Positions 14,158 to 62,700 of a stretch of DNA of 64,000 bases are shown here, piece after piece; position 1 is the first letter of the stretch; each line of letters starts with the position of its first letter. The stretch is from Hydrolagus colliei. Lineage: Eukaryota. The notes beneath the pieces were generated by a model. That model was not told the origin of the DNA, did no database searches, and saw nothing but the letters and a program-made list of their open reading frames with translations. Position numbers and translations under genes: made by a program. The stretch lies in NCBI GenBank assembly GCA_035084275.1, contig CM068756.1, forward strand, positions 14,508,001 to 14,572,000, read 5' to 3'.

Positions 14158-14470
14158 GGAGTCCTGTAGTGTAGCTCAGTGGTTAGAGCACTTGCCTTAC
14201 AAGCGCGAGACCTGTGCTCGAATCCAGGCAGGTCAGGGTGAAACCTTGGGCAAGTTTCCTTACTCCACAGGCCTAATAATAATCCCTCCAAAAAAAAAAT
14301 AACTTGCAGTTGAATCCACGACTGTTTGTGGGGCGCTGCTGTGCGCAATTGACTGCCACGTTTCAACCATAAATATATGGTCAATTCACTTTACAGTATA
14401 TTCTGTGAAGCGCTTTGAGATGTCCACAAGGTGTGAAAAGTGCGATATCAACTGCAAGGATTATTATTAT
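14158..14470 (+). mobile_element. tRNA-derived SINE, full length
   Basis: TAGCTCAGTGG A box, CTCGAATCC B box, tgactgccacgtttc core, L2-like tail ending in attattatt. Confidence 0.8.
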
Positions 14471-17740: not shown

Positions 17741-18351
17741 CTAAAATACAGCAGAATTATTCGTTTATTAACACTTAGTTGTTTCATGTTAAGTGTTTTT
17801 TTTTGTGGTTCAAAGCATTTGAAAAGTTCAACTCCCACACCACAATGTTTTCACTAACATTGTATGAATAGCGACAGATTTTGTACATTCTCTTTTAAGG
17901 TAGCCCATACCAACTGATTTTTTCACGAATGCTGAAGAGACAGTTGTAGAGGAGACATATTCACGCAATTTTGTTTATTGAAAAGCTGATAGAACATGTT
18001 ACACAAAACAAAATTTCCTAACTTTTATATTCAGTTTTTAGTTTTGTAGCAGTTACAGTACAATTCAATTGTCTTTATGAGGCATACAACTAACTAGTTA
18101 TCTTTAAAAATATTATCAGATTAATATACAGAATATGTTTTTGCAATTACCTATGGCCTATAAAGGTATGGTGAGCAATGTTTTCAAATAATTTTCCTAA
18201 GGACATATCATGTAACAAATTAATCAATGCAGTTGTGTTTAAAACTGATGCAAGGAGCATTGCAGCACAAGACTAATAGTAAATTCAGTAAATTGGAAAG
18301 CTACATCTAGTCTACATCTATACACCAATAGCAGTTTCTGTGCCTGACACA

Positions 18352-18525
18352 TTATTTGGATCTTGGTTCCCTGGAGACAGCTGCTGCTCCTCCTCTGTGG
18401 TTTCTCACATGGATCTCTGCATACTCTGTATTCTCAACAGTACTTTTATGTTTCCCTGTTTTTTTTGAGCAATGTAAATCTAGAACACTGTATGTCAGAT
18501 TGTTCCCAGCTGCTCTTTGATTGTT
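18352..18525 (-). CDS. A2 terminal tail exon (LTYSVL ITIM, TEYAEI ITSM)
   Basis: cag| acceptor, phase 0, NNQRAAGNNLTYSVLDL..ENTEYAEIHVRN..PRSK-TAA. Confidence 0.8.
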   Translation of the reverse strand, partial: NNQRAAGNNLTYSVLDLHCSKKTGKHKSTVENTEYAEIHVRNHRGGAAAVSREPRSK

Positions 18526-18980
18526 CTGAAAAGGTAAAATTTGAGAATTTAATTACATTAAGTTGTCTTCCTTCAGTTTACAAACATGTCCACAAATATT
18601 TGCCAATTATTATTTGCAGCCAAACATGCTCCATTGTTTATTTGATGAAGGCACTGCTCCTCACCGAATTGAGCTTAATAGAATCTAGTGGTGAAAATTC
18701 AGTTTCATATTGGAGTAGTTGTGCGTCAACAGCAATGCTAGGCTGGGAAAGAAAAGCAAAAATCAATCAGGGTAGAAGTCGTTCAAGTGATCTGGATTAG
18801 AAACGTTTCTGTTTTGCTAAACAATGCCGGATTCTCACCATACTTTCATTGCTGGGGTCAGAGACAGGATGAAGAAAGATCAGAGGAGAATGAAACATTA
18901 ACTGCAGAAATGGATTTCATAATAAATAATAAATTGAGATCTACTACATATAATGAAGCAAGTAATATTCTGGGATATAC

Positions 18981-19091
18981 CTGGGAGTACACAGTCCTCT
19001 CGTCTTGTTTTTTAGGTCTTGGTGTTTTTTTGCAATGTTTCAAATCCACTTTGGCATAAGTCACCAACTCATTCCCTGTTCCCTGCTGTGT
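18981..19091 (-). CDS. A2 tail exon 2 (VTYAKV ITIM; TVYSQ|V)
   Basis: 111 nt, phase 0-0, cag| and |gtatat. Confidence 0.8.
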
Positions 19092-19212
19092 CTGTAAAAC
19101 AGAATGTGATAGATTGTCAACATCAATGGTCTAGAGAATCCTTTATATGTATTGATCAAAATGTCCTCAAGAATAAATATTTTTACCTAAGTTTAAAAGT
19201 TGGTGCTACCAT

Positions 19213-19525
19213 TGTGGAGTCCTGTAGATCAGTGGTTAGAACACTCACCTCACAAGCGAGAGACCCACATTTGATTCCCAGTAAGGCAAAATTATCATCA
19301 ACTTTGTTTACTGCGCACACCTGATAATAATCCCTCAAATAGAAGAAATAAATAAATTGGTCACTTCAGTCCATGACTATTTGCATCACAATGCTGTATA
19401 CAATTGGCTGCTGCATTTTGCCCAGAAATATATGGTCAATTCACTTTACAATGTATCCTGTGAAGTGCTTTGAGACGTCCAGAATACTGGAAAAGTTCTA
19501 TATGAAATGCAAGGAATTTTATTAA
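19213..19525 (+). mobile_element. tRNA-derived SINE, shared with the A3 intron (37106-37335)
   Basis: gagtcctgtagatcagtggttagaacactc head, ttggctgctgcatttt core, L2-like tail. Confidence 0.75.
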
Positions 19526-19922
19526 TATTATTTAATATATAGCATTCAAATATTTTACCCGCAAAAATCAACCAGTGTAGTAGTTGTTCATTGATCTACA
19601 GAAATATGGTATGCGCTTTTCTATATATGATTGATGTCCCAGTGCCTTATAGACTGATACAGAGAATACCTGGTCTTTCACAAGAAAAATAACTATTTGA
19701 CTCTACAGTGACAGATTCTTGCCATCATATCACAACCCAGGACAGTGCCAGAGGATTAGTATCAGTTACAGTGCCAGAGTGAAGATTAGAGAACAAAGAA
19801 AGATTAACCACAAAAATGTACAAAATATCTTACAGTAAACACTGAAGTGAGTCCAACAGAAGCAAAATAATTCAATTGGATAGAAAAGGTTTTAGTTTTG
19901 ATTCTGTGTTTCTGAGAAATAC

Positions 19923-20033
19923 GTGGGAGTACACAATGCTCTCCTCTTGCCTTTCAGGTTTTGAAATTTTCGTGGAACTAGTCAAATTTAATGGGGCATA
20001 AGACAATGGTGCATTCTCTGCTGCACGCTTTGC
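19923..20033 (-). CDS. A2 tail exon 1 (LSYAPL ITIM; IVYSH|V)
   Basis: 111 nt, phase 0-0, tag| and |gtattt. Confidence 0.8.
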
Positions 20034-20356
20034 CTATAAAACAAAATCTGATTTACAACAATAAAAATACAATGCATTTCTGAATGCATCTCAGGTTTGG
20101 ATGATGTCCTGATGGACAACATGGAGTCCTGTAGCTCTGTGGTTAGAGCACTCGCCTTACAAGCATGAGAGCTGTGTTCCAGGCAGTTCAGGGCAAAACC
20201 TTGGTCAAGTTTTCTTACTCCACACCCCTAATAATAATCCCTCCCCCCAAAAAACAATAATAGAATTGGTCATCTCAATCCACGACTGTTTATGGGACTG
20301 TGCTCAATTGGCTGCCATGTATCACCCACAAATATACAGTCAATTCACTTTACAAT

Positions 20357-20630: not shown

Positions 20631-21099
20631 TGTGAAGTGCTTTGAGTCATCTAGAAGATGTAAAAAGCGCAATACCAAAATGCTGGGTTTATTATTATTA
20701 ATATCTTTCCATTCGAATAATTCTATTTTCAGGTGAAAAATCTGCTGCAATGAATTCAATAAATTTACCTGATCTTTGCAATGGCCCAATATGTGCTGAT
20801 TTCCGCACCTTAGAAAGAATTTGAAAAAAAATGTGGATATTCACTAAATTTTACATAAATAGTTTCAAATATATTTTGGTTATACTGTACCGAACAAAAA
20901 GCTGTCCAAAGACTAGAAACTCTAAGAGCCTGGTTGTAAAAGGGTAGTTGTCTTCCAACTGCCCTTCTAGTTTGAATGTTTACACATTACAACCTGGATT
21001 AAAGTCACACTAATCACATAGTTCCAGATCCTTAATGTGATTCCCTCAATTGGGGAATTGAATATAAAACCAAAGGGGGTAATGTTAAGATGAAAAATC

Positions 21100-22725: not shown

Positions 22726-22851
22726 CTTTCTTTTTGTTTAATTGGCATTGTTTCCTAATAGTGATGAAAAGGATCAGAAATATCAGCAGGAATGTCAGCC
22801 CTCCACCCACACACCCAGCCATCAGTCCATAGGGAGGCTGAGCGGCACCGT
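22726..22851 (-). CDS. A2 transmembrane exon
   Basis: 126 nt, phase 1-1. DGAAQPPYGLMAGCVGGGLTFLLIFLILFITIRKQCQLNKKK; no charged residue in the TM. Confidence 0.88.
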
Positions 22852-23292: not shown

Positions 23293-23613
23293 CATCCAAT
23301 CCTGAGTTGGGTTTAGAAACCGTGTAACTGGCAACCACTGGATTCCGAAGGGTGACATGAGATGCCAGACAGGTATAAACAACCTCTCTCTCTAAAGGCT
23401 GAGTCTCTTCCATAGAGCTGGAAATGTTGAAAAGTCCATTTGTATTCATTTCTTTCTTTGAATTGATCCCTGTTTTAACTTCATTGCCATCTTTCAGCCA
23501 CGTGAGCGTTAAATCCCCCGGGAAAAAGTCAGTCATTTCACACACAAGAGTCAGAGACTTTGAGGAATTTCCTTCAGGATCTCTGGGGAATATCTTCAGT
23601 GGAGTCGGGGGCA
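23293..23613 (-). CDS. A2 Ig C1 exon
   Basis: 321 nt, phase 1-1. LVCEMTDFFPGDLTLTWLKDG..YTCLASHVTL. Confidence 0.9.
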
Positions 23614-24696: not shown

Positions 24697-25002
24697 CTTG
24701 TACAATTAAATGTGACCCAGATCCATGTTTGGTGACTTTCCCCTGACCGGCCAGTGTGCAGACATAGACCCCAGAGTCGTGGAAAGTCACGTTCAGCAGC
24801 TGGAGCGATTTGGAATCAAATATTTTCCTGTTAGTAGGTGTTTGATGCAAGTATTCACTCTCTCCTTCTTTCCACCAGTGAAATGCTCTATCTGAATTTT
24901 GTTGATCGTTGTCAATCCTGCAACTGAATTTAACGTCTTCACCTCGCAACGCTGTCCGTTTGGTAGGATATTGGATCACGTTCATCGATGCCTCAGCAGC
25001 AA
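24697..25002 (-). CDS. A2 VJ-type V exon
   Basis: 306 nt; 5 substitutions versus the A1 V exon by manual comparison. Confidence 0.92.
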
Positions 25003-26319
25003 CTGTCAGGGAATGAATTAACCTATAATTAGTGATTATTATTGAAAGGAAAAAGCACAATTAAATAGACGAAAAGAGGGAGAGAAAGGTGGGAGAACGT
25101 TAGAGGGAAAGAAAGACGGACGTATTCACTACATGTTTTAAAACTGCATGTGTACCGTTTTGTATTTTAACTATAATATAGTAAAATGACAGACCTGTGG
25201 CTATAATCCCCATTAGAGAAAGACGGGATCACATCACTGGCCAACATTGTGAGCAGTTGTTGAGACTCACAGTGAACCAGTCACTGTGACAAACCTTTGC
25301 TGATTTTGTTGATTTTGCAGTGAGGTTTGACTTCCTGTCCCCGAGATTCAGAGACGGCTCAGTTACTATTGGCAAGGACAGATGTGCCTTTCGATACTAA
25401 GTCGGATCATTCCGTGTATCGGCAGGAGAAAGGGGGGTTTAAACATTGCCGTTGTCTGTGTATCGCATTATTACCTTTCATATAAAACATGTACGATTAT
25501 GAAACGTAACCACCTGTACGTAAATGGGAAATCAATTGACTGTACATTTTGTGGAGGAAATGGGAATAGAAAAGGTCAGTTTGTTGCCAAATAACTATTG
25601 TTATTAAAATGTAAAACACCAGTTTAGGCGACAGAACCCGAGCCACCAGTGATTGAAATCACTATTGTATTGAATTCCCTTCCAATAGTTTATTTAATGC
25701 GATTGAAAACCGTGAATACAAATCTGATGATTTCAGTAACAATACATTATGTGTCAGGATCCAAACCCATTTATTGAACGTTTAACGGTAGATATGACGT
25801 AGCTCAAATATATTTTCACAAAGTCAAATTAATCTTCGTTGTAACTGCGACAACGATGTGCGCAGCTTCGCTCTAAAAACACAAGTAGCTAACGATCTTG
25901 ATGGTCCGCGTGAACTAGAGACAAACTTAAATGATTTTCGAGTGTGCTTTGGGCAATGTTCTTTGCACACAGCAATACTGTATCTCCCATGGTTTTTTTT
26001 TCGTAGAATTTACAGTAACTGACCAGAAAATGAAATCAAACTCTGATTTAGACCCCGGGTGGTCCTGGATGTAAATTAATTTTGATATTGTTGTTAATTG
26101 ATTACATCATGTGCCATAGGGGGTAACACGAGGGAACAAATGGGAGCTGTATTGACAGGAATTTGCACCCATTTTACCCCAGTTTACATCACCATTAGAA
26201 ATCACAAGGTGTATTATTTCATGCCTGAATGATTCTATGAAAGACAAAAGTCACTGTGTGTGATCTGGCTGTGATGGGCTGTAACATGCGAATGTGGATC
26301 ATTTGGTGTATTAGGCGGT

Positions 26320-36258: not shown

Positions 36259-36432
36259 TTACTTGGATCTTGGTTCCCTGGAGATAGCTACTGCTCTTCC
36301 TCCATGGTTTCTCACATGGATCTCTGCATAGTCTATATTCTCAACAGTACGTTTAGGTTTTCCTGTTTTTTTGGAGGAATGTAAATCCAGAGCCGAATAT
36401 GTCAGATTGTTCCCAGCTGCTCTTTGATTGGT
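36259..36432 (-). CDS. A3 terminal tail exon (LTYSAL, IDYAEI)
   Basis: Phase 0. TNQRAAGNNLTYSALDLHSSKKTGKPKRTVENIDYAEIHVRN..SK*. Confidence 0.82.
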   Translation of the reverse strand, partial: TNQRAAGNNLTYSALDLHSSKKTGKPKRTVENIDYAEIHVRNHGGRAVAISREPRSK

Positions 36433-39400
36433 CTGAAAAGACAACATTTGTGAATTTAATTAGATTACTTTGTTTTTCTTCAGTTTACAAAAATTTCCTC
36501 AAATATTTGCCAATTATTATTTGCAGCCAAATTGCTCATTGCTTATTTGATGAAGGCACTGCTCCTCACAGAGCTGCGCTGAACAGAATCTAGTGGTGAA
36601 AATTCTGTTCCATATTGGATTAGCTGTGCATCAACAGTGACAGTAGGCTGGGAAAGGAAAGTGAAAATCAGCCAGGGGAGAAGTTGTTCAAATGATCTGG
36701 ATAGGAATTATTTCCTGTATGTTAAACAATGCCAGATCAGGGAGAGGAAAGATTGGAGGAGAAAGAAAGATGAACTGCAGAAATAGATTTCATGATAAAT
36801 AATGAAGTGAGATCAACTACATAAAATGTAACAAGTAATATTCTGATATATACCTGGGAGTACACAGTCCTCTCGTCTTGTTGTTTAGGTCTTGGTGTTT
36901 TTTTGCAATGTTTCAAATCCACTTTGGCATAAATCACCGACTCATTCCCTGCTCCCTGCAGCGTCTATAAAACAGAATATGATAGATTGTCGGCATTCAC
37001 TGGTCCGGAGAATCCTGTATAAGTATTGATCAAAATGTCTTGAAGGATAAATGTTTTCACCTAAGTTTTAAATATGTTCCTATCATTTTTGTTATCATTG
37101 TGGAGTTCTGTAAATCAGTGGTTGGAATACTTGCCTTGCAAGTGAGAGACCTGAATTTGATTCACCAAGGCAAAATAAATGAATAAAGTGGTCACTTCAG
37201 TCCATGACACTGGTGGACACAATTCGCTGCCGCATTTTGCCCACAAATATATGGTCAATTCACTTTACAATATAACTAGTGAAGCACTTTGAGACGTCCA
37301 GAAGTCGTGAAATACGCTATATCAAATGCAAGGTGGTGGGAGATGAAGAAAGCCGTTCATATTAATTTTTAGTATTAACATTAGCTTATCAAAAGTTTCT
37401 AGGGGCGCACATCTGAAGGCTCACCTAGGGTGCCAAATACCCTTGCGCCAGCCCTGTATATGAGCGATGTCCCAGTGTCTTATAGATTGATACAGATAAT
37501 AACTTGTCTTTCACCAGAAAAATAACTATTTGACTATACAGTGGCAGAATCTCGCCATCAAATCACAACCCAGGACAGTGCCAGAGTATCAGTGTCAGTT
37601 ACGGTGCCAGAGTGCAGATTAGAGAACAAAAAAAGATTAACCACAAAAATGTACAAAATATTTTACAGTAAACACTGAAGTGAGTCCAACAGATTCAAGA
37701 TAATTCAATTGGATAGAAAAGGTTTTTGTTTTGACTCTGTATTTCTGAGAAATACCTGGGCGTACACAGTGCTCTCCTCTTGCCTTTTAGGTTTTGAAAT
37801 TTTCCTTGAACTAGTCAAATTTAATGTGGCATAAGACAATGATGTATTCTCTGCTGCACGCTTTGCCTATAAAACAAAATATGATCACAATAAAAATACA
37901 TTGCATTTCTGTAGCACCTTTCGAGTCTGGATGATGTCTTCAGATGCTGATAGATTATTGGCTCCACGGTTTGTAAATTGTTGTGTAGGTACTATTCAGA
38001 AAGCCCTTAGGAATAAATATTTTCACCAAAGTTTATAATTTTTGATATAAAGCTTTGAAATATTTTACACGGAAAGTTTTATTGAATACTCTGTCTCCAA
38101 GGGCATGAAACTCAATGCCTCATTTTTCAATAATACATTGAGGCCATATGGATGCACAGAGCAAAGCCTTCTTTATTTCTTAATCATTAATAATATGGAC
38201 AATGTGGAGTCCTGTAGCTCAGTGATTAGAGCACTCGCCTCACAAGCGTGAGAGCTGTGTTCGAATCCAGGTAGGTCAGGGTGAATCCTTCAACAAGGTT
38301 TCATACTCCATGCATTATTATGTTAATCATTCGAAAAAAATAATAAAATTGGTCATCTCAATCCCCGACTGTTTGTGAGACAACACTGTGTGCAATTGGC
38401 TGCCGCATTTAGCCCACAAATATACAGTCAATTCACTTTACAATACATGTTCTGAAGCACTTTGAGACATCCAGAAGATGTAAAATCCGCTTTTCTGTAC
38501 TAAAATGCAAGGATTAATATTATTACTATCTTTCCATTTGAATAATTCTGTTTTCAGGTGAATTATCTGCTGAAATGAATTTAATAAATTTACCTGATCT
38601 TCGCAATGGCCCGATATGTTCTGGCTTCTGTGTGACCCTTAAAAACAAATTGAAAAAATAATGTATTCATCAACAACAAAATTACATTTATAGAACGCCT
38701 TTCCCATTGGGAGATGTTCCAAAGCGTCCAATTCACTTTATTTTACATAAATAGTTTCAAATATATATTGGTTATACCCAATAAAAAGCTATTCAAAGAC
38801 CACAAATTCCTGAAACCTGATTCTAAAAATATAGTTGTCTTTCATCACACAACTGCCCTTCTAATTTGAATATATACACAACACAACTGTATTAGAGTCA
38901 CATTAATTACATGATTTCAGCTTCATAATACGACTCCCCACTCACGCCCAACTTTTCTTATTCCTTCTCATACTGTCAACCACTGACCCCAGTTCTCGAA
39001 CTGCCCCTGCTCTGTGGAGCACCATACCTGAAAGCCTCCAATTGCCTGTATCCACAGATCCTTCAAATTGTTGAAGGAATAACTGAGAGAATAGATAATT
39101 TGTGGAATTGGGTATAAAACCAAACGGGTAATGTTAACAAGAAAATTATTTAATTAGACCACAATTAGAATATTGTTTCCAAAAATTCTTTTGCCGACTT
39201 AGGAAGGATGGAAAACATGAATTGGTGCAGATGTTATTCACCAGGACAATACTGGGGAATTTGTTGTGCCCTATGATCAGACACTTTCACTTTGGAACAA
39301 AGAAATTTGAGTGTGACCTGCTAGAGGATTTTAAATTTATGAAAGGTTTTGATGGCATCAATGGAGAATTTATTTATAATGATAGTTGATTCAGTGACAT

Positions 39401-42400
39401 GAAGGCAGTGCCTAAGATTGCTATAAAATGGGAAATGTGGAGGTAAGGATATTTAGTTTTTCTTTTCCTCAACCATCACACTCAACCCGGTATTCCATAT
39501 CCTAACTACTCTGTTAGTGAGGAAGCAATTGATGAGTTGATGACTAGACACTGATATTCTCTAGTTAGGATATGGGATACGCCATTGAGGCAGTAAAAGT
39601 ACGCGAAGAAATACTCTTCTATTCGCATTAATAAAATGAATAGAAGAAGCAATCTAAAACTTTTCAGATGGGGTAACGAGGAAAAGCAGGTAAACTTGGG
39701 ACTGAAAGCATTGCTCTAAAAAACACAAGCACGGCTACAATTGATGGGATGGGTTTCATGAGTGCTGCAAATTTGTATGTTTCTATTAAGTTCTATGTGT
39801 ACCTCTTTGTCTTTAGTTTCAGAGGTCTTCCCGGTCATCACACCAAATTCAAACACAAGGTGTGGGTTTCCAGTGATGCACTAGCCATCATTTGGGGTTT
39901 TCCACAAGCTATGAATAGCTCTATATAAATATGTATTTGTAATGCACTGTGACATGTTTCCCTATTTCCCTATGTTAAATATTTCCTTTACTCCTTTGTT
40001 TCCCTATTATAATAAGAGCAATAATAATCACTATTGGCATGGCAGAGCCTCGTCCCCACCTTCAAGGCCATTCTCAGCCTTGCCCCCGCCTATCTCTCCA
40101 ACCCTATCAGCCCGCCTGTCCCCTCCACTCAGCAGGCTTTGGCATGCTCCATGTCCACCGTCCTAACTGCCCAACCATCATTGGCCAGGCTTTCCGCCTC
40201 GCTGCTCCCACAATGTGGAACTCCATCCCACGATCCCTTCACCTCACTTCCTCTCTTTCCTCCTTCAAGGCCGGTCTCAAGACCTTTCTCTTCGACCGTG
40301 CCTTCTGCTCCCCTCCTAACTCTTCCCCTTCTCCTACTCTCCTTCCCCTTCCCCTTCCCTCAACCCCGACCCTTCCTCCCCTGCTCGGTTCCCGACCTGA
40401 TTGTTCAGCGCTTTGGGACATCCTCCCGACATGAAAGGCGCTCTATAAATGTAAATGTGTTGTTGGTGTAGCATTTGTCCCATCTTCTAGATGTCTCAAA
40501 GAAATTCACAGAATATACTGTGAAGTGAATTGCCTGTACATTTCTGGGTGAAAAGCAGCAGCCAATTGGGAACAGCAATGTCCCACATATGGTCATGGAT
40601 TGAGTGACCAAAAAATGTTTTGTCTCCAGGTTTACTATCCCAGAAATTTGTTCCGCAAATCAACTAACAATCACGGTTAGATTTACTGCATGGTAAACAG
40701 ACACGGGTGGAGTAAGGAAACTGGCTCAACATTTCACCTTGCCGATAATAGAACTCAGGTCTCTTGCTTGTGAGGCACGTGTCCGAACCACTGAGATGCA
40801 AGATTCCACAGAATCAGCACCAATGTTGAAAAGTAGTGAACACTGGTGCACACTTTGAACCTGTGCTCAGGTTAGTGAGGATGCAATTGATAAGTTGATG
40901 ACTATACATATACGGCTCCCAGCCAGAATTGCTCTCTCCCTGCAGCACCCCCCACCCCCCCTCCCGCACCCCAACACCCCACTTTTCCCCGCTCCAAGCT
41001 TGGCAATTGGAAATGAAATGTAAACTTTGTCACAAGTGAATGGGATGTGAATTCTTTAAAGATCGAACAGAGATACTATGGGCTGAACGGCCTTCTATTC
41101 TGTAAGTTTCTTGAGTTCAATCGTAACAGATTTCAGATACTTGTTGCTTGTTGAAATATCTTACTAAACATGCAGCTTAATATATACAAGGTGAGATTCT
41201 TTGAGGACATGTTATCGCATAGTCTCTCATTGTCACCTCTAGTCTATAAAATGAATTATTCTATTAAACATTCACAAATAACGTAAATAAAATAGGAATA
41301 TATCTTACCTTTCCTTTTGTTTAATTTGTAATGGGTCTTAATAATGATCAAAAGCAGCAGAAATATCAGCCCTCCACCTACACATCCAGCAATCAGTCCA
41401 TAGTGAGGCTGAGCGTCAATCTCTACAAGAACAGAATCAACTGAATGTGTTAATAATAATAATAAGATAATAATCGTTGCATTTGATATAGCAGTTTTCC
41501 CATCTTATCGACGTCTCAAAGCACTTCACAGAATATACTGTAAAGTGAATTGACTATATTTGTGGATGGGCGGCGGGGAGAAGGAACGTTTAATAGACTA
41601 TTGTTAGTTGTTGGTTGTTATTGTTTTTATTGTTAATATTGTTGCTTTTGTTGTTTATTGTTCTTGATTTTGTTGTTTATGTTGTTGTTTGATTCCCCCC
41701 CTTGCCCCTTGGTCTTCCCCCCCACCCTCTTCTTCTTCCCTCATTCCCTTCCCCACTTTCTGTTCCCCCTTTTCCCCTTCTCTCCATTTTCCATCTTGCC
41801 CCCCTTTCTCCCTGATTTTGCCCCCCACCCACCTTTCCCTCCCTCTCTCCTTTACCCCACTTTCTCCTCCCTCTTCCTCCCTGACCTTGCTCTACACCAC
41901 CATTCTCTCCCTCCGTCTTCCCCCTTGCCCTCTTTTCCCCCCTTTCTCCCCTGGCCACATTTCTGTGACAGTGGGACACTGCTGTGCGCAATTTGGCTGC
42001 CGCGTTTCACCCACAAGTATACAGTCAATTTTCCTACTCTTCTTTATCCTGCCTCGACCCCTCCTCACCTGCTCTTGTCCCTACCCAACTGTACATCGCC
42101 TTGGACATCCTCTCGACATGAAAGGCGCTATATAAATGTAAGTTGGGATTGATTGATTGCTCGGTTGATTGATTGATTGATTGATTCACTCATTCATTGA
42201 TTGAAACGAGGCAGCCTATTGCACACAGTATATGGATTGAAATGACCAATTTTTATAACTTTTTTTTTGGACAGATTATTATTAGGCGTGTGGAGTAAGG
42301 AAAGTTGCCCAAGGGTTCCACCTTGATCTGCCTGGATTGACTCCAGCAATGAGTTATGCTTTGATCACATCAGATCAGAAATATTAAACCAGATTTTTTT

Positions 42401-44898
42401 TAATTAAAAAGAATTCCTGGCTGAACTGTTGTAGTTGAACTCACTGTTTATCAAAAGTCATCTAGCTGATCAGCGAGACTGAGAGTGGCACCCCTCAGTC
42501 ACCGGGGGCAAAGACAACAGCTAATCTGCACCATATAATGCCACTAAGTGGAGGTTACCAAACGGTGAAAATTTATCACCCAATTTGAAGGGAAGTTTTT
42601 ATCATGTAATAACAACAAAATAGGACAACGATATGCATTTGATATGCATAAGACAAGTAGGCTTCCTACCATCAAATCCTGTGTTGGGTGTAGAAACTCT
42701 GTAACTGGCAACCGCTGGATATTGAAGGCTGACATGAGATACCAAACAGGTATAAACAACCCCACACTCCAAAGGCTGTGTCTCTTCCATATACAGGTAG
42801 CTAGAAACTTCGTAAAGTCCATTTGAATTATTTTCTTTCGTGAAATTCATCACAGTTTTAAGTTCATTGCCATCTTTCAACCACGTGAGCTTTATGTCCT
42901 CCGGAAAAAACGCAGCCGTTTCACACACAAGAGTCAGAGAATTTGCTGAATCTCTTTCAGAATCTCTGCGGAATATCTTCAGCGGGGTCGGGAGGACTGG
43001 AGGACAGAGAATGGAGCAGAATCATGTTGCTGGTGATCAGTTGGAAGATAACGTTTTATGCTCATTTGAATTGTATATTAACTATTTCCTTAAAACATTG
43101 TAGCAAGGAATCTGGATTGTAATAGCAAGAAAATTATTTTGCAATTTTAAAAGTGTTAGTATTTTTTGTGCTGAAAAATGTGTCCTGTTTAGTAGATATA
43201 GTCACTTTGGAGGGGCTAACGAAGGTAGTAGTACATAATCTTAACATTGTGGCTCTGATAAATGATGTTGAACCCTTCTCATCACATGGATTGTTGTGAT
43301 GTTGTGGAATCCAGTCCCACAAGTGGCTTGAGTTGCAGGTAAAGTGGAATACAGTATATAAAGAGAGACAGATCATAGTTGTAAAGGAGTTGACGAGTAG
43401 TGAAGAAATTGGAATAAAAGCTCTGCCACCATCCTAGAGCAACAACAACCCACATTTATACAGTGCTCCTCAAGCAGCATAGTGACCTTAGATTCAGATT
43501 TAAATAGAGATTTCACCATACACAAATAAATAGGTAACAAATCCCCATTCAGACCAAAATTTATTTTCTTCCACTGTATTTCTCTACATTTTATAAAATT
43601 TGAACCAATTTACACAAGTGCTTCAAAATATTGTTGTGCATGAAATGTTCACGTTTTCTAAACAGTTACCTTCTGCCATTCGTATTATCAATAATAATCC
43701 TGGCATTTGATGTAGCATTTTAGATATTATTAAGATATCTCAAATCGTTGCACATATTATACTGTGAAGCGGATTGGTTGTGTTGGGGGCGAAATTTAGA
43801 AAAAAATGTTACTCAATAAATTATAATTTTGTGGACCATGGGTGGAAAATATTAGGATCTCCACAAAGCAATGTAACATAAATAGTCACATAGTAAAAAC
43901 AAAATTTAACTGGGAATTTCATTGGCGAGCACATGGTGAGGAAGAATCTCTCTTCTCTACACTAATACTGTAATACCATAGAATCTTTAATATCCATCTG
44001 AACAAGCAGAAGGGACCTCGGTTTAATGTCTCCCTCAAATAGTAGGAAGCCACTGAGAGCTCCCCCAACATTGCATTGAATTGTAAGCAACGTGGGACAA
44101 CCTGAATCAATGCATAGAATAAAATATCAAATATAGTAAAATTCTAGTGATTGTGGTATGGAGGGATACAAATGTTTGAAAGCAATTATGGAGAATCTCA
44201 ACTTCCCACTTTGTTATGTTTGATAAATTTGTTGGCTCAGATCAGTACAATAACAAAGGGGAAAACCTAATAATTTACTCATATTGATTCCAAAATGCAC
44301 CAGTGATGATTCTATGGTACTAATGTATTCACACTTACCTTGTACAATTAAATGTGATCCAGTTCCATTTATTGCTACTTTCCCCCGATGGATCACTGCA
44401 CAGAAATAGACCCCTGAGTCATGGAAAGTCACATTCAGCAGCTGGAATATTTTGGAATCAAATATTTTCCCGTTATTAGGTTTATTATGCAAGTGTTCAC
44501 TCTCTCCTTCTTTCCACCAGTGAAATGCTGCATCTGAAGTTTGGTGATTACCGTCAATACGGCAAGTAAATTTAACGTCTTCGCCTTGCATTGTTGTCCA
44601 TTTTGGAGGATATTGACTCACTTTCACGGATGAATCAGCAGCAACTGTTAGGAAATGAATTAACCTATAATTAGTGATTATCGAGAGGAAAAAAACGCAA
44701 GAAAACAAATGGAAAGAGGGTGAGAACGGTGGGAGAACATTAGAGGAAAAGAAAGACGGACATATTCACTGTAGACATTTTTAAACACTTTATATCGTTT
44801 TGTATTTTAACTATACTACAGTATATATAGTAAAATGACATACCTGTGGCTACAATCCCCATTAGAGAAAGGTAGGGGATCACATCACTCTCCATCAT
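36259..44898 (-). CDS. Gene A3: intact L-VJ-C1-TM-(ITIM/ITSM)x3 receptor, 413 aa
   Basis: Exons 44844-44898, 44339-44644, 42670-42996, 41309-41422, 38594-38637, 37756-37866, 36854-36964, 36259-36432. All GT-AG and phase-compatible; total 1242 nt, open to TAA. Confidence 0.85.
36854..36964 (-). CDS. A3 tail exon 2 (VIYAKV; TVYSQ|V)
   Basis: 111 nt, phase 0-0. Confidence 0.82.
37756..37866 (-). CDS. A3 tail exon 1 (LSYATL; TVYAQ|V)
   Basis: 111 nt, phase 0-0. Confidence 0.82.
38594..38637 (-). CDS. A3 juxtamembrane linker exon (GSHRSQNISGHCEDQ)
   Basis: taag| and |gtaaat, 44 nt; converts phase 1 to phase 0 as the model requires. Confidence 0.72.
40030..40460 (+). mobile_element. L2-like LINE 3' fragment
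   Basis: [27 protein letters not shown] and the shared 3' end. Confidence 0.8.
41309..41422 (-). CDS. A3 transmembrane exon
   Basis: 114 nt, phase 1-1. EIDAQPHYGLIAGCVGGGLIFLLLLIIIKTHYKLNKRK. Confidence 0.85.
42146..42200. repeat. (GATT)n microsatellite
   Basis: Direct reading. Confidence 0.8.
42670..42996 (-). CDS. A3 Ig C1 exon
   Basis: 327 nt. LVCETAAFFPEDIKLTWLKDG..PLECGVVYTCLVSHVSL; carries one extra Cys. Confidence 0.9.
44339..44644 (-). CDS. A3 VJ-type V exon
   Basis: 306 nt. KFTC..HWWKEG..DSGVYFC..NGTGSHLIVQ. Confidence 0.92.
44844..44898 (-). CDS. A3 leader exon (MMESDVIPYLSLMGIVAT)
   Basis: 55 nt, donor gtatgt, phase 1. Confidence 0.78.
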
Positions 44899-56633: not shown

Positions 56634-56786
56634 CTAGAGATGGCTTCTGCTGCTCCTCTGTAGTTTTTCCGCATGTACTTCTGCATAGTCCGTATTCTCG
56701 TTGCGATTAATTTTCCCTGTTTCCTTGGAACCAGACATATCTAAAGCAGCATAGGTCACGTTGTTACTGGGCGTCCCCTGTTTGGT
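56634..56786 (-). CDS. A4 terminal tail exon (VTYAAL ITIM, TDYAEV ITSM)
   Basis: cag|, phase 0. TKQGTPSNNVTYAALDMSGSKETGKINRNENTDYAEVHAEKLQRSSRSHL*. Confidence 0.8.
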   Translation of the reverse strand, partial: TKQGTPSNNVTYAALDMSGSKETGKINRNENTDYAEVHAEKLQRSSRSHL

Positions 56787-59700
56787 CTGTAAAGCCAATG
56801 TTTCACAATATCATTAGTTGACATTTGGCAAATCTAGTAGCTTAACCAACAGTAGTGTGTCAATTTGTAAGCATTTGTAGGTGTGGAAATAAAGTGGACA
56901 GTTCAAGGAGGTTCACTTTAGATCAATAATCTGTGTGGTCAGCAGTAGACAGGGAAGATGGGATAATTAAATAGCTTTTGTAGAATTTATGTAATCAATG
57001 TGTTAAATATTATCTCAAATTATATTTGGAATGCTTATATATTTGAGACATATGATCGACCTCATATGAGGGGAACTAGTGACTAGTTTCAAAGAAGATC
57101 TTTGCTCAAGGAGGAGAAACAGAAGACTGTTTATGAACAACAAACTCCTTTCATTCCTTATCAGTCATTTCCTTGTGGAAAAATGATCTGCAGCTGGAGA
57201 GAGCAATGTTGCATTTGTTTTCAGAAAGGAACCATCTTTCAAAGAACAATAATTAAGTGAAAGGTCACCTTTTGAACAACATAAATGGAGATCGATTCAA
57301 AAGAGAAAAGAAAGAAATTGCAACTTGAAGTCACAACCCATATGCCAGCTTCTAAAGAATGAATATCAAAATTACCATTTAAGCAACACGAAATGTACAG
57401 TAATAACTATATACTTTTCGATTATATGGAACTGGAAACCGTACAACAATACTTGGATTCCTTTTGAGGACATATTTGGATTTGAATGGGACATTAAATT
57501 AGAGATTGCTTCTCTATCTCTATCTCTATCTCTATCTCATAGCATGTGGTTTGGTCAACTTAAATTGTTGTGAACTATAGTATACATGTGGATACATAAG
57601 CACAATTAGATTTTTAAAAAAATACTTATCACCATATTGATCTGAATTAATAAACCTTGATTAATTGTTCAACATTTGTGTCAGTCCTTACTTCACCGCA
57701 GGGTCATTAAATAGATTAACCCTTACATTTGTCAATTCCTGATTATTCTGCAGGACTGTAATGTATTAGCATTATCAACAGTGACCCGAAAAATTCACGA
57801 TAATGAAGGATTATGAAAGAGCAATATATTATTTGTACACTTCTGCAATAGAAAGTAACCAAAGGGAACAAATTTAAGATAATCACACAAAAAAATTAAC
57901 TGGAGGTTAGAAATATATATTTTTGCCAAGGATGGTTTCGTATATAAATTGCTGCCTCAATGCATAGTGGAAGAAAAGATAAAGAAAAGATCAAGATCAA
58001 AGATCATAAAAGTATTCTTAAATAGAAATGTTTAAGTAGATACATGATGGAACATATCAACGAGTGTGGAGAGTGAGTTGAAAAATATTCAACTTTTTTT
58101 TTGTATGTGGTAAACATTATGTATCACATTCAATGATTAGATTTTCTCATGCCGAGAAAACACAAGGGAAAATTTGACGAAACGATGGATCTGTTTTGGG
58201 GTCACAACATTTTGTGGTGTATGAGTCCCAACATTGCCTACACTGCTGAACTCATCGCCTTACAAGAGGAATGGGCATTTGGATAAATGATGAATGATTG
58301 CTGGACGCTCCCTGCAAAATCGGGGTGGATGTGTGAAAAATGTGAGAAGCAACTAAGAGTGTTTAGGTACAATGGACCCCAACAACGAAGTACGGAAATT
58401 CCATTGAAACTTATCTGTTTTCCTTTGACGAGTAAAATATCCCCAAATCGGTTGGCTGAAAGTGGTTTGTATCTTGTCTTTGTGCTTTAAAAAATCTCTA
58501 CCTGGGCATATACTGTCCTCTCCTCTTGATGCCTGGGTTTTGGAACTTTCTTCGAACTATTTAAATCCAATGTGGCATAAGCCATCCTCTCAGAATCTGC
58601 TTCCATCACAGTCTGTTAAAACAGAAAATCATTTTACATTGTCCAGTACTTTCAATAGGCTGCATCATTTCATTTTGTTCCTACAAACAAACAAAATTAC
58701 ATTTATATAATGGCTATCCTAAACAAGTGGTCGTGTATCCAAACAACAACAACAAAATTACATTGGTATAGCGCCTTTCATGTCAGGAGGACGTCCCAAG
58801 GCGCTAGACAGTTACTGCTTCATCTCCCGCTAACGGTGGGGCCGGTGGGGGGGAACGGGACGTGGAGCAGGCCTGCTGAGTGGAGGGGATGGGCAGGTTG
58901 GTAAGGGGATAGGAGGTCATGGATGTGGGGTGGGGTTCTGGACGATCTGCAGCCTGTGGAGGAAGGAATTGGGAAGGCCGACCAGCAGGCATTTGCCTAA
59001 TCGAGCCGGGATGTAATGAATGCGTGTTTGAGGGTTTCAGCGGCTTTGAGGGTGAGATATTGGCAAAGGTTATTCTTTATGAGGTTAACTGATTTATAAT
59101 TAATTTTACACGTACGTGGAACAATCATTTTAAGTTGTATGATATTTTGCCTCAGAAAGTTCCAATGTGAGCTCCTGCGATGGCTCACTGTCCTCGAGGA
59201 ACACTGTACTTTCTGCCACAACGCCCTCCTGACCCGCCAGTGATCTAACTTTCAACCATTTACCTCGCACTCCAGCAATGCTTTCTGGAATCACAGCCTC
59301 GGCTGCTAGTCCTTTTAAGCATCACAATGTATTTAAAAAGAAACAAAATAGCTAAATATCACCGGTATTTTTACATTTAAAATGGTCTCACTTAATTTGC
59401 TTTAACTGTGTTAACAATCTTACCAGTTCTCCAGGACAGTCCAGTCTATTTGAACCTAAACATGAATATAATTCAAGTAAATCAATTAAATATTTATTAA
59501 CTTTTCATGGCAGTAATATCAAAGGTACACTCAACCAATTTCAAACATAAAGTTGCAACATATAGTCTTATACAGTACGTTTTCTTCTATACACTTACAT
59601 TTGTTCAAGCGCTGTAGTATTTAAGAGTTCCTACATGTTCATCCTGTCTATTAATGCAAGTTATTGTTCTTGTTGTATGGAATTTTAAAAATCCATCCGA

Positions 59701-62700
59701 CTCAACGTTTTCTATCCCACTTTCTGTCGAAGATATTGCCTCTTCAAATCTTTCCTCTCCCAACATTCACCTCGCAAATTCAGCATCCCATGAGAAATAC
59801 ATCTCGTTTGTTTATGCTAATTTTTCAGCTTCCGTGGCTCCTATACGCCCACCCGGACCGTCCGTTCAACAGGACTTGGCCTGCTCCAAGCCCCCCGCCA
59901 GAACCGCCATCGGAGGCCGGGCCTTCAGTTTCTCCACTCCCACCTTATGGAATGCCATCCCTCAATCCCTCCATTTCGCCTCTTCCCTTTCCTCTTTCAA
60001 GGCCGGTTTGAAGACTTTCCTCTTCGATCGTGCCTTTTGTTCCACCCCAAACTCTTTTACCTCCGCTTCGTGTTTCACCCCTTCCCAAACACTCCCCTCC
60101 CAGCTCGGGTCACATGCCTCCTGTTCAGCGCCTTGGGACGTCCTCCCGACGTGAAAGGCGCTCTATAAATGTAAATTGTTGTTGTTGTTGTTGTTATTTG
60201 GGTCTGCTCCCTTCACCGTTTACCAAATATAAACACAGTAATCATCGGGGCCTATTACAAAATTGTGTTCTTCAACTCCTTGTCTCTAGGTGGGGTGAGG
60301 TAATTTTACTCGCCAAATTATACATTTAATAGGAGTAAAACTCAATGATTTCTTACCTTTCCTTTTAATTCTTCTGCATCCAATCACGAACATGATCAAA
60401 ATAACCGATGATACACATGCACCAACTGCATATTTAACAATTAGTAAATAGTTGTTCGAACTTCCATTCCCTACAAGGACAGAATAAACTAGTCATGAAC
60501 CTACACTTGCTACATGAACCTACATGAGCGAGTCACTCATTTTAGAGTCCGTTGCTTATTCTGTAAATCAGAAAGACTAGCTGCTCCAACTCTAATTGCT
60601 CAAACTGTGAAAGGTGATTTCCAGAGCGCATTTTCACACTCCAATCTTTCCCTCGAATGAAACATGAAGCAGGTTTTATATTCCAAAATTTTTGTTTTAC
60701 GTATAATGTTTGCATGACATTAACGGCACATCTATAATTTTCAACCTGGATTAACACAAGAAAATATTCCGTCACAATTTAATATATCATAAAATAATAC
60801 CAAGATTGTTGGTGACCTACCTTTATCAGGAGGTTGAACTGTATAGTTAGCAATCTCCGGATTTTGGAGACTGATGTGAGATACCGAACAGGTGTAAACA
60901 TCCCCGTTCTGGACACGCTGTGTCTTCATGTAACTGTAAGCTTTAAACAATTTCCCGAGATTCTGCTGCTTGACGGTGTTAGTCACTGTTGTCATTTCTG
61001 TGCCATTTCTAAACCAAGTAAAGTTCAGATCCTCCGGGTAAAACTCAGCCGTTTCACACACAAGAGTCAGAAACACAGACTGATTTGTTTCGGGAAACCT
61101 GCGGGAAATCGTCAGTGGAGTTGGGGGAACTGGGGAACAGGTAAGGAGACAAAATCATGTTACTTGAGGGATTGTGAGTCTTTGTAAATCTTTCTGGCTT
61201 TTTTTTAGGGTGGTGGGAGTGTGTGTGGGGGTGGTGAGGGTAGCGGTGGCTATGTGCGCACATTGGCTGCCTCATTCGCCTGCAGATACGGTTAAAACGC
61301 GTTTGGAGACTGTCCAGCACATGATTCTGCACCTTATGAATTGCAGTGACTATTGTTTCCAGTTGACCCCCACCCCCCCCAGTGCGACCACATTGAATTG
61401 AGATTTCACCTGCCGCTTCAGGTGCTTGCTTAAGATCCCATAGCATTTTTGGAAAAGCGAAGAGAGATTTCTCCTCGGGTCCTGGCCAACAATCCCACAG
61501 ATAAACTGGGTCAAGTATGTCGCGAATGGCTATGGAACATTGTTGTTTGCCAATCGGGTAGCGATTTCACATCCAAAAGTTACTGGATTTTTACAGCGAT
61601 TCATGTTGACACGAAAAGCATCAGCATATTATCCAATATATCATTCTACTTCTCATTATTAATGATTGAAATGTGGCAATATCTTCAATAAAATAAATAG
61701 GAGAGAATCAGATACTCACTGAAGGCAATTCAACTACATATCAAAAACATGGGACATTTATCTGGTGGATAAACTCTTAGAGATTGCTAATCAGTAGTGG
61801 GTACCGAATGGTTGCTGCTGGAATAAATAGACTAGTGAGAAGTCCCGTTCCTTCCAGCACTAGAAAATCCACAAATCATTCCTAATTAAATTCTGTGTAT
61901 TTAAGTTAAAAGGGGACGCATGTATATGAAATTATCAGAATACTGCTCCTTGCATTTGATATAGCACTTTTCTTATCTTCTAGATGTCTCATGGTGATTC
62001 ACAGAATATACTGTAAAGTAAATTTACTGTATAGATATGCGTGAAACGTGGCAGCCAATTGCACACAGTAGTGTCCCACAAACAGTCGTGGATTGAAATG
62101 ATGATTTTTTCTCGAGGGATTATTATCAAATGTGTGTGGTAAGGAAACTAGTCCAAAGTTTTCCCCAGCCTGGAATCGAACCTAGGTCTCTCACTTGTAA
62201 GGCGAGTGCTCTAACCACTGAGCTACAGGACAATTAATGCTCAGAGTTGTCAAATCATGAAGCATTATATTATCATAATAATAATTATTGTATTTGATAT
62301 ACAACAACAATAACAAAATTACATTTGTATAACGCCTGTCACATTGGGAGGACATCCCAAGATGCTATATAGTTTTTTCACCTCTTGTGACAGTGTCCCA
62401 CAAACAGTCGTGATTCTTTGACCAATTATTATCATATTTAATAAAATAATGAGAGTGAATTTAGGTGGCTGCCAGTTTGAATTGTGCACAATTCATTTTT
62501 TTTAATTGGATTTTTCAGCGTAATTATATTTCTTTCCTGGGGAGCGCAACATTGCCATAAATTTACAGATAATGAAATTCAAGAACACAACTGTAAATGT
62601 AACGAAAACTATAGAAGAGATTCGTAAAGAATTCTTGTGGGATATTCAAAGATAGGAACAGTTTCAATATCCGTATTAGTCACTTACCGTACACGGTTAA

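What the first reader, a model, noticed from the sequence alone, without database searches (positions are those of the whole stretch)
18352..20033. Tail built by duplicating the terminal exon, with the Val codon of YxxV turned into the splice donor: a splice-controlled ITSM switch
Seen: five internal tail exons (A2 x2, A3 x2, A4 x1) are all exactly 111 nt, phase 0-0, and homologous to the terminal exon (xxYxxL/V-[DN]L...K.P...E.xxY). Each ends Y-[SA]-[QH]|GTA. Splicing gives TVYAQ-T, TVYSQ-T/N or IVYSH-T, so the motif is broken. Read-through of GTA gives Val and completes TVYAQV/TVYSQV (ITSM) or IVYSHV (ITIM) before a stop. The read-through text (VFLRNT, VYIRI) aligns with the coding continuation of the terminal exon (IHVRNH), and the A4 terminal exon uses GTA for that Val. 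Inference: the exons arose from terminal-exon copies, and intron retention or alternative 3' ends would tune the ITIM:ITSM ratio (SHP versus SAP-type adaptors).
Basis: partly seen in the sequence, partly recalled or inferred. Interest (0 to 1): 0.75.

Follow-up and report, generated by a model that had tools for sequence, protein, structure and literature searches.

The report
Modular inhibitory tail exons, chimaera SIRP-like genes
Three neighbouring immune-receptor genes of a chimaera-like fish build their inhibitory tails from repeated 111-base exons that all end one codon short of a signalling motif; the pattern is real and ancient, but nothing shows that it works as a splicing switch, and the gene copy at the reported coordinates is knocked out of frame.

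Summary
Five minus-strand tail exons are each 111 nt, phase 0-0, flanked AG|...|GTA, and end at Y+2 of a TxYxx motif. They align in register with the first 111 nt of the terminal exons (50% nt identity at shift 0, 23-34% at other shifts).

The genes are V-C1-TM receptors. RefSeq labels their relatives "SIRP-alpha-like" in elephant shark, sharks and rays.

What I add:
- The 37-aa units form two ancient types, proximal and distal, each present in both chimaeras and sharks. All five window exons are proximal type, so the junction at Y+2 arose once.
- RefSeq models are spliced (TVYAQ|TKQ). Thr at Y+3 is the commonest residue across the family.
- In elephant shark, distal-type copies that became internal use the next Val codon (Y+5, GTGAGA) as donor, and the intron after it is plainly homologous to terminal-exon coding sequence. 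This supports "Val codon becomes donor" in kind.
- At Y+3 the intron homology is only a weak trace.
- Gene A2, the reported span, has a 4-nt deletion in an upstream 44-nt exon, so its tail is out of frame.
- There is no conserved read-through ORF and no conserved intronic poly(A) signal.

The parts
19923..20033 (-). A2 tail exon e2, proximal-type unit, 111 nt, ends IVYSH|GTATTT
   Evidence: The donor CAC|GTATTT is very weak (U1 duplex -1.5 kcal/mol). There are 8 aa changes from 9 nt differences against A3 e4; 5 changes map to the A2 branch.
18981..19091 (-). A2 tail exon e1, second proximal-type unit, 111 nt, ends TVYSQ|GTATAT
   Evidence: It groups at 99% support with the second units of elephant-shark genes.
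18352..18525 (-). A2 terminal exon, distal-type unit with LTYSVL and TEYAEI, stop codon included
   Evidence: From acceptor to Y+2 is 111 nt.
18403..18411 (-). Latent donor-like CAT|GTGAGA (Val at Y+5) inside the A2 terminal exon; the same string is at 36310-36318 in A3
   Evidence: The homologous GTGAG is the real donor of 117-nt internal exons in elephant shark (L005 8764-8880, L007 9248-9364).
20769..20808 (-). A2 short cytoplasmic exon (cyt1), 40 nt: a 4-nt deletion that shifts the frame of all A2 tail exons
   Evidence: The exon is 44 nt in A3, in five elephant-shark genes and in Heptranchias.
22726..22851 (-). A2 transmembrane exon, ends in phase 1 (AAAG|GTAAGA)
37756..37866 (-). A3 tail exon e4, 111 nt, ends TVYAQ|GTATTT
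36854..36964 (-). A3 tail exon e3, 111 nt, ends TVYSQ|GTATAT
36259..36432 (-). A3 terminal exon (LTYSAL and IDYAEI), stop codon included
38594..38637 (-). A3 cyt1 exon, 44 nt, keeps the tail in frame
41309..41422 (-). A3 transmembrane exon
58502..58612 (-). A4 tail exon e5, 111 nt, ends TVYAQ|GTAGAG; read-through gives VEIF then a stop
   Evidence: Its orthologue is L002 10327-10437.
56634..56786 (-). A4 terminal exon (VTYAAL and TDYAEV, with Val = GTA at 56676-56678), stop codon included
59424..59455 (-). A4 cyt1 exon, 32 nt (in-frame 12-nt deletion relative to the elephant-shark orthologue)
60357..60470 (-). A4 transmembrane exon
24701..25006 (-). A2 V-set exon (approximate limits from tblastn); the C1-set exon lies at about 23312-23632
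44343..44708 (-). A3 V-set exon (approximate limits); the C1-set exon lies at about 42692-43015
62689..63033 (-). A4 V-set exon (approximate limits); the C1-set exon lies at about 60819-61130
17974..17979 (-). AATAAA 373 nt after the A2 stop; equivalents are at 35919-35924 (A3) and 56299-56304 (A4). These are the likely true poly(A) signals.
   Evidence: The position is conserved in all three genes; no such hexamer is conserved in the tail introns.

Best explanation
The window holds three tandem minus-strand genes (A2, A3, A4) of a receptor family specific to cartilaginous fish. The layout is leader, V-set Ig, one C1-set Ig, transmembrane exon, a short 44-nt cytoplasmic exon, and then a modular inhibitory tail.

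The tail is a string of 37-aa units, each with a proximal ITIM-like tyrosine (xxYAxL/V) and a distal TxYxx tyrosine. Internal units are encoded by symmetrical 111-nt phase-0 exons, so units can be duplicated or lost without breaking the frame. Relatives carry one to five units.

There are two ancient unit types. The 'proximal' type (...PRPKxQEERTVYAQ|) is always internal, and its donor GT occupies the Y+3 codon. The 'distal' type (TKQ..NKLTYAAL..KNTEYAE[IVL]...) is normally the terminal exon. The most economical history is that an ancestral one-unit terminal exon was duplicated, and the upstream copy became internal by using the NTN/GTN codon at Y+3 as its 5' splice site. That happened once, before chimaeras and sharks split. 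The internal exon was later re-duplicated in the chimaera lineage, giving e1/e3 beside e2/e4.

The same route was taken again later at the next Val codon (Y+5, GTGAGA), giving the 117-nt exons in elephant shark.

In the mature, normally spliced mRNA, the Y+3 residue of internal units comes from the first codon of the next exon. It is mostly Thr, so only the proximal ITIMs and the last unit's TxYxx[IV] are canonical docking sites for SHP-type phosphatases (inferred from the motif rules, not tested).

Reading through the donor is a by-product of this history, not a demonstrated regulatory device. A2 is a recently disabled copy: a 4-nt deletion in its 44-nt exon puts the whole tail out of frame.
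For: Ig domains are.

Family membership and spliced RefSeq models in Callorhinchus, Heptranchias, Heterodontus, Scyliorhinus, Mobula and others come.

The same exon plan (TM 114-120 nt, 44-nt exon, 111- or 102-nt proximal exon with GTA donor, terminal exon) was mapped on genomic DNA of five elephant-shark genes and one Heptranchias gene.

In-register exon homology is shown. The two unit types are separated by a branch with 98% SH-aLRT support, and each type includes both chimaeras and elasmobranchs. All five window exons fall in the proximal type, and e1/e3 sit with elephant-shark second units at 99%.

The Y+5 Val donor, with unmistakable intron-to-coding homology, is. The Y+3 residue in spliced proteins is mostly T, but also N, I, V, L, M, S and A. 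The A2 frameshift is, with about twice as many substitutions on the A2 branch as on the A3 branch (21 against 10).
Against: The direction of the first duplication (terminal to internal, or the reverse) is inferred, not shown.

The trace of homology in the first 18 intron bases is weak. It would not be expected to survive more than 400 million years unless it is constrained or renewed by gene conversion.

All 11 chimaera-lineage proximal donors lack G at +5 and pair weakly with U1, which could mean that inefficient splicing is selected for.

Three UniProt entries for elephant shark read straight through the donor to the first intronic stop.

No RNA data were available. The A2 frameshift could in principle be an assembly error.
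Confidence: 0.62

Rival explanations
1. The GTA donors at Y+3 are kept weak so that regulated intron retention, or an intronic 3' end, converts TxYxxT (inert) into TxYxxV (ITSM) and truncates the tail. This would tune SHP-type against SAP-type adaptor use.
For: All holocephalan proximal donors lack +5G and pair with U1 at only -5.7 to -8.3 kcal/mol, against -7.7 to -12.5 for ectodomain and TM donors. UniProt entries P0014, P0028 and P0029 for elephant shark are exact read-throughs of the intron after the proximal exon. Heterodontus and Hemiscyllium genes include [IV]G after YAQ, and RefSeq lists alternative isoforms that stop just after the first unit. The junction position is conserved across cartilaginous fish.
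Against: The read-through ORFs differ in length and frame between orthologues (4 against 24 codons in the A4 pair; 16 against 48 in the e2 type). No poly(A) hexamer is conserved in the introns; A3 e4>e3 and A4 have none at all. Retention of any intron but the last would place a stop upstream of further junctions, which by the established rule predicts nonsense-mediated decay. Spliced tails already end in a complete motif, so the qualitative gain is small. The T at Y+3 (TKQ) recurs from chimaeras to rays in spliced models. The UniProt models may be annotation artefacts; they join V and C1 exons of the upstream gene to this tail.
Confidence: 0.1
2. Splicing does tune the tail, but by cassette-exon skipping. 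The 111-nt phase 0-0 exons can be skipped singly, changing the number of ITIMs and the spacing to the terminal motif, as in CEACAM1-L/S or Ly108 isoforms. This does not exclude the best explanation.
For: Symmetrical exons of identical length and phase and weak donors are the usual attributes of cassette exons. Unit number varies from 1 to 5 among paralogues. Precedents are exon 7 of CEACAM1 and exons 7/8 of Ly108.
Against: None of the retrieved RefSeq isoform pairs differs by exactly one 37-aa unit. No RNA data were available.
Confidence: 0.2
3. Reverse direction. The internal 111-nt exon is the older form, and the terminal (distal) unit arose from it when a donor was lost and translation ran on into the intron to a new stop and poly(A) site.
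For: Both unit types are equally ancient on the tree. The boundary is demonstrably labile in the family, with donors at Y+3, at Y+5, and 6 nt downstream giving [IV]G.
Against: Every gene needs a terminal exon, so a one-unit ancestor must have had a terminal unit. The two documented recent cases (the 117-nt exons) go from terminal to internal, with intron sequence still readable as former coding sequence.
Confidence: 0.12

Closest known systems
Mammalian SIRP-alpha / SHPS-1 (PTPNS1)
   Same: It has an N-terminal V-set domain with a J-like GxGTxL strand, C1-set domain(s), a single TM, and a tail of paired tyrosines (an ITIM-like YADL followed about 23 residues later by TEYAS[IV]) repeated twice. 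RefSeq names the shark and chimaera relatives 'tyrosine-protein phosphatase non-receptor type substrate 1-like'. The human tail sequence is from my own memory, not checked here.
   Different: There is one C1 domain here, not two. There are 1-5 tail units, not two. The distal tyrosine of internal units has Thr at +3 after splicing, whereas both distal motifs of SIRP-alpha are complete. Orthology, CD47 binding and the mammalian exon boundaries were not tested.
CEACAM1-L/S and Ly108 (SLAMF6) tail isoforms
   Same: These are inhibitory or switch receptors whose ITIM/ITSM content is set by alternative splicing of short cytoplasmic exons. Skipping the 53-bp exon 7 of CEACAM1 removes all tyrosines, and Ly108-H1 lacks exons 7 and 8 and so lacks one ITSM (PMC11646291, PMC3135348).
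   Different: There the whole motif is included or excluded by exon skipping or frameshift. Here the proposal is that the last residue of the motif is supplied either by the next exon or by the retained donor, and no isoform data exist.
Tandem exon duplication (general phenomenon)
   Same: Adjacent exons of equal length and phase with clear sequence homology.
   Different: The textbook outcome is mutually exclusive splicing. Here the copies are used in series to lengthen a signalling tail, and a terminal exon was made internal by co-opting a sense codon (Val, GTN) as its donor. This is clearly documented for the Y+5 GTGAGA site.
Predicted elephant-shark genes XP_007902825 (P0030, A4 orthologue), XP_007902824 (P0032), and the RefSeq/nr proteins P0038 and P0042
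   Same: They have the same exon plan and the same YAQ|GTA junction. P0030 is the orthologue of A4, with 69-75% aa identity per exon.
   Different: It is a different species. The window's genome does not appear in the protein collections searched. A2's frameshift and A4's 12-nt deletion are specific to the window.

Membership tests
SIRP-like V-C1 Ig receptors of cartilaginous fish (RefSeq 'PTPNS1-like') | V-set domain followed by a C1-set domain, TM and tyrosine tail | tested here: met
   Pfam V-set/ig and C1-set hits on the exon ORFs of A2, A3 and A4. TM and tail come from conceptual splicing. The tail-unit profile finds 25 proteins, the best named PTPNS1-like.
SIRP-alpha proper (orthologue of mammalian SIRPA) | Two C1 domains, CD47 binding, conserved synteny | tested here: not met
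   Only one C1 exon lies between the V and TM exons in all three genes and in six mapped relatives. Ligand and synteny are not testable with these tools. I therefore file the genes as SIRP-like, not as SIRPA.
ITIM ([SIVL]xYxx[IVL]) | Consensus around the first tyrosine of each unit | tested here: met
   LSYATL, VIYAKV and LTYSAL in A3; VTYAAL in A4. MAYATL in A4 e5 has Met at -2 and is borderline. Phosphorylation and SHP binding are not testable here.
ITSM (TxYxx[VI]) | Consensus around the second tyrosine of each unit in the spliced protein | tested here: not met
   Internal units give TVYAQ-T, TVYSQ-T/N and IVYSH-T after splicing. The consensus is met only in the terminal exons of A2 (TEYAEI) and A4 (TDYAEV); A3 has IDYAEI, which is ITIM-type. 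It is met in internal units only if the donor is read through.
Tandem exon duplication | Neighbouring exons of the same length and phase with significant sequence homology | tested here: met
   111 nt, phase 0-0. Internal exons are 63-68% nt identical to each other and 44-53% to terminal units, in register.
Terminal-exon internalisation with a sense codon as donor | The intron downstream of the new donor is homologous to the terminal exon's coding continuation | tested here: inconclusive
   For the window's proximal-type exons (donor at Y+3) there is only a weak trace: 0.42 at shift 0 against at most 0.39 at other shifts, and local alignments are not significant. For elephant-shark 117-nt distal-type exons (donor at Y+5) the feature is clearly met: 73-87% over 15 nt against at most 53% at other shifts.
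Regulated intron retention or alternative last exon | Transcripts with the retained intron, a conserved read-through ORF, and an intronic poly(A) signal | tested here: not met
   The ORF is not conserved and there is no conserved poly(A) hexamer.

The most novel reading that the evidence does not exclude
In a whole family of cartilaginous-fish inhibitory receptors, the last residue of the distal tyrosine motif is deliberately placed across a weak GTA donor. The cell could then choose, by 5' splice-site use or intron retention, between an inert TxYxxT and a SAP/SHP-competent TxYxxV. That would be a one-codon, splice-encoded SH2 switch maintained for more than 400 million years. Separately, Val codons next to the motif (Y+3 GTA, Y+5 GTGAGA) act as pre-formed splice donors that repeatedly let terminal exons become internal.
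Probability: 0.1. Interest if true: 0.75.

Novelty: new variant of a known kind. Interest (0 to 1): 0.38.

Why it matters
Inhibitory-receptor tails with several ITIM/ITSM motifs are central to immune checkpoints such as SIRP-alpha, PD-1, CEACAM1 and the SLAM family. This locus gives an unusually legible record of how such tails grow. A terminal exon is duplicated, and a Val codon beside the motif is reused as a splice donor. The new internal exon, being 111 nt and phase 0-0, can then be copied again.

The locus also shows that the Y+3 specificity residue of a motif can be handed to the next exon. Single-codon changes at an exon start (T, N, I, V, L in different paralogues) then decide whether the site is canonical.

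If retention at these weak donors proved to be regulated, it would be a new and very economical way of switching SH2 recruitment. As it stands, it is a tidy evolutionary case in an unstudied family.

Tried and rejected
- Transcript-derived proteins: none of the 45 relatives of P0014 came from read assemblies, so I ran no further search on tail fragments.
- P0014, the read-through model, is not on record on any contig. I mapped it instead onto locus L003 of the spliced RefSeq model of the same tail.
- L001, next to L003, holds a short-tailed paralogue and no tail units.
- Heterodontus and Mobula loci came back without DNA. The [IV]G junctions and the possible read-through in isoform X2 could therefore not be checked on DNA.
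- Smith-Waterman alignment of 150 nt after each donor against 150 nt after Y+2 of the terminal exons gave z from -1.4 to 2.0, not significant.
- I looked for compensating splice sites that would rescue the A2 frame (alternative acceptors in cyt1 and e2, alternative TM donor). Reading the sequences, I found none.
- The 2025 paper on SIRP-alpha splice isoforms concerns ectodomain isoforms only. Searches for work on shark or chimaera SIRP-like tails found nothing relevant.
- A tRNA scan of the SINE-like repeats in the A2 introns found no tRNA gene.
Full report
**What is at the coordinates**

The span 18352-20033 lies on the minus strand. A motif scan of all six frames found exactly five stop-free segments ending [TI]VY[SA][QH] followed by Val. 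All are on the minus strand, at 18981, 19923, 36854, 37756 and 58502.

Each is an exon-like block of exactly 111 nt. Each follows a pyrimidine tract and AG, and is followed by GTA. Three terminal exons carry the same unit and run on to a stop:
- 18525..18352
- 36432..36259
- 56786..56634

From acceptor to the Y+2 codon they measure 111, 111 and 108 nt. The eight units align without gaps apart from one codon in A4, with Y12, E31 and Y35 invariant.

**Is it more than chance?**

Internal exons are 63-68% identical to one another, and 92-95% between the A2/A3 twins. They are 44-53% identical, ungapped, to the terminal units.

Sliding the terminal sequence by 1 to 15 nt drops the mean identity from 0.50 to 0.23-0.34. 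One representative pair has 55/111 matches, with z=5.5 and 0 of 20000 shuffles as high. The exon-level homology, in register, is therefore solid.

Two things temper the '5 of 5'. The exons are paralogues of one another. And any phase-0 GT intron reads Val when read through, because GTN always codes Val.

**What the genes are**

Upstream of each tail lie a V-set exon, one C1-set exon and a TM exon (Pfam; tblastn).

A profile of the eight units, searched against 1.84 billion representative proteins, gave 25 hits. Twelve had E-values at or below 1e-10, with 2 to 5 matched units each. The named ones are RefSeq or UniProt predictions from Callorhinchus milii, Heptranchias perlo, Heterodontus francisci and Scyliorhinus torazame. 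A later search added rays. Most are called 'tyrosine-protein phosphatase non-receptor type substrate 1-like', that is SIRP-alpha-like.

The window's own proteins are not in those collections. The A4 exons are 69-75% identical to elephant-shark XP_007902825, so the genome is another holocephalan. Earlier notes of this scan also call it 'chimaera-like'.

**Exon plan on genomic DNA of relatives**

I fetched five elephant-shark loci and one Heptranchias locus and mapped the RefSeq proteins on them. All have the same plan:
- a TM exon of 114-120 nt that ends in phase 1
- a 44-nt exon
- one or two proximal tail exons of 111 nt (102 nt in two genes), ending Y-x-x|GTA
- a terminal exon

The junction at Y+2 is thus shared by chimaeras and a hexanchiform shark, and it is the junction used in RefSeq models (TVYAQ|TKQ...). 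Conceptual splicing in the window gives in-frame tails for A3 and A4.

**A2 is out of frame**

The 44-nt exon of A2 (20808..20769) is only 40 nt. An alignment with A3 and three elephant-shark genes shows a clean 4-nt deletion. A4 has an in-frame 12-nt deletion.

The TM exon ends in phase 1, so canonical splicing reads e2 in the wrong frame and stops inside it. I found no alternative AG or GT that would restore the frame, reading the sequences.

Other signs point the same way:
- A2 e2 has the worst donor of all, CAC|GTATTT, with a U1 duplex of -1.5 kcal/mol.
- It differs from A3 e4 by 8 amino acids for 9 nucleotide changes.
- Polarised with elephant shark, the A2 branch carries 21 changes against 10 on the A3 branch.

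The copy at the reported coordinates is therefore probably a recently disabled tail. Its 'IVYSHV ITIM' variant is better read as decay than as design.

**Two ancient unit types**

A tree of 59 units splits them by a branch with 98% SH-aLRT support into two types:
- a proximal type (...PRPKxQEERTVYAQ), which is always internal
- a distal type (TKQ..NKLTYAAL..KNTEYAE[IVL]), which is usually terminal

Each type contains both holocephalans and elasmobranchs. All five window exons are of the proximal type. A2 e1 and A3 e3 group at 99% with the second units of elephant-shark genes.

So the window's exons are copies of an exon that was already internal. The event that put a donor at Y+3 happened once, before the chimaera-shark split. 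With only 37 columns the finer branches of the tree are unresolved.

**The Val-codon-to-donor idea**

Laid out codon by codon from Y+3, the distal-type sequences read [I/L/V]-[H/Q]-V-R-N-H, that is NTN CAN GTG AGA AAC CAC.

Two elephant-shark exons of the distal type have become internal (L005 8764-8880 and L007 9248-9364). They are 117 nt long, end Y-x-x-[LV]-Q, and use GTGAGT or GTGAGA as donor. Their introns continue AAC CAC GG. GGA...

In register, they are 73-87% identical over 15 nt and 53-73% over 30 nt to terminal-exon coding sequence, including the window's own. Other shifts reach at most 53%.

That is a clear case of a duplicated terminal exon made internal by a Val codon. But it is the Val at Y+5, and the motif stays whole. 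The same latent CAT|GTGAGA sits in the window's terminal exons at 18403-18411 and 36310-36318.

For the proximal exons, where the donor is at Y+3, the evidence is thinner:
- Local alignments of 150 nt are not significant.
- Single in-register pairs give p from 0.002 to 0.9.
- Pooling 11 holocephalan introns against 8 distal sequences, positions +4..+18 reach 0.42 at shift 0. That is the best of 25 shifts, but the next best is 0.39, and beyond +19 there is nothing.

**The switch hypothesis**

In favour:
- All 11 holocephalan proximal donors lack G at +5. They pair with U1 at -5.7 to -8.3 kcal/mol, against -7.7 to -12.5 for the V, C1 and TM donors.
- Three UniProt entries for elephant shark end in exactly the read-through of the L003 intron, up to its first stop.

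Against:
- Those entries join the V and C1 exons of the upstream gene to this tail and may be annotation artefacts. The RefSeq model of the same tail is spliced.
- Read-through ORFs are not conserved. A4 gives VEIF* while its orthologue gives 24 residues in another frame. The e2 type gives 16 against 48 codons.
- The three 3' UTRs share an AATAAA 330-373 nt after the stop. The introns share none, and two introns have none at all.
- By the established rule for nonsense-mediated decay, retaining any intron but the last would mark the mRNA for decay.
- The spliced proteins already end with a complete TxYxx[IV] or IxYxxI motif. Retention would change the count (for example 2 ITIM + 1 ITSM to 1 + 1 in A4), not the kind.
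- Thr at Y+3 (TKQ) recurs from chimaeras to rays in spliced models. Some paralogues have I, V, L or M there, supplied by the next exon. Evolution evidently adjusts this residue through the next exon's first codon.

**Comparison with what is known**

Tail isoforms that add or drop ITIM/ITSM by splicing are well known. Examples are CEACAM1 exon 7 (PMC11646291) and Ly108-H1 lacking exons 7/8 (PMC3135348). Tandem exon duplication is a textbook process.

The domain plan and the paired-tyrosine unit resemble SIRP-alpha. But there is only one C1 domain, and orthology is untested, so I file the genes as SIRP-like.

What seems new is the documented route by which a terminal signalling exon becomes internal, using Val codons flanking the motif as donors. 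A consequence is that the Y+3 specificity residue is encoded across an intron. I found no paper describing this family's tails.

It has not been followed up.

**Verdict**

The functional half, a splice-controlled switch, is unsupported and on present evidence unlikely (about 0.1). The specific copy reported is frameshifted.

Noticed in passing
window 303-3206 (+); also 33610-34848 (+) and 45849-46361 (+): There is an intact-looking 968-aa ORF of a non-LTR retrotransposon, with an endonuclease/exonuclease/phosphatase domain plus reverse transcriptase (Pfam). Two further reverse-transcriptase fragments lie between the receptor genes.
   Followed up: partly
window about 19205-19330 and 20105-20230 (both in A2 introns); similar text near 14109-14390 and 49239-49613: These are SINE-like repeats that begin with a tRNA-like head (GGAGTCCTGTAG..GGTTAGA..). 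ARAGORN calls no tRNA gene there. They account for much of the A2/A3 intron length difference.
   Followed up: partly
L004 13928-13966 (Callorhinchus milii, gene of P0042): The terminal exon of this elephant-shark paralogue stops at ...NNLT-TGA, exactly where the ITIM tyrosine codon stands in its relatives. That gene has lost the whole distal unit.
   Followed up: no
window 36334-36336 (A3 terminal exon, codon 33): A3 has changed the Thr at -2 of the terminal motif to Ile (IDYAEI, ITIM-type instead of ITSM-type). A2 and elephant shark keep Thr.
   Followed up: no
proteins P0049/P0079 and P0080 (Heterodontus) and P0061/P0078 (Hemiscyllium): In these shark genes the first unit ends [YH]AQ-[IV]G before TKQ, as if the donor had moved 6 nt downstream and the old GTA were now translated. 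Isoform X2 of one gene continues ...IG-ASSWSFSI-stop, which would fit read-through of a GC-type donor (GCAAGT). No DNA was available to check.
   Followed up: partly
window 28595-29447 (+): This is a GC-rich, strongly skewed stretch that reads as Pro/Ser/Leu-rich low-complexity ORFs in several frames. It looks like a simple repeat rather than a gene.
   Followed up: no
window 60357-60470 (A4 TM exon): The A4 TM exon has a Lys near the start of the hydrophobic stretch (..LLIVKYAVGAC..) that the elephant-shark orthologue lacks. I did not examine whether it lies inside the membrane span.
   Followed up: no
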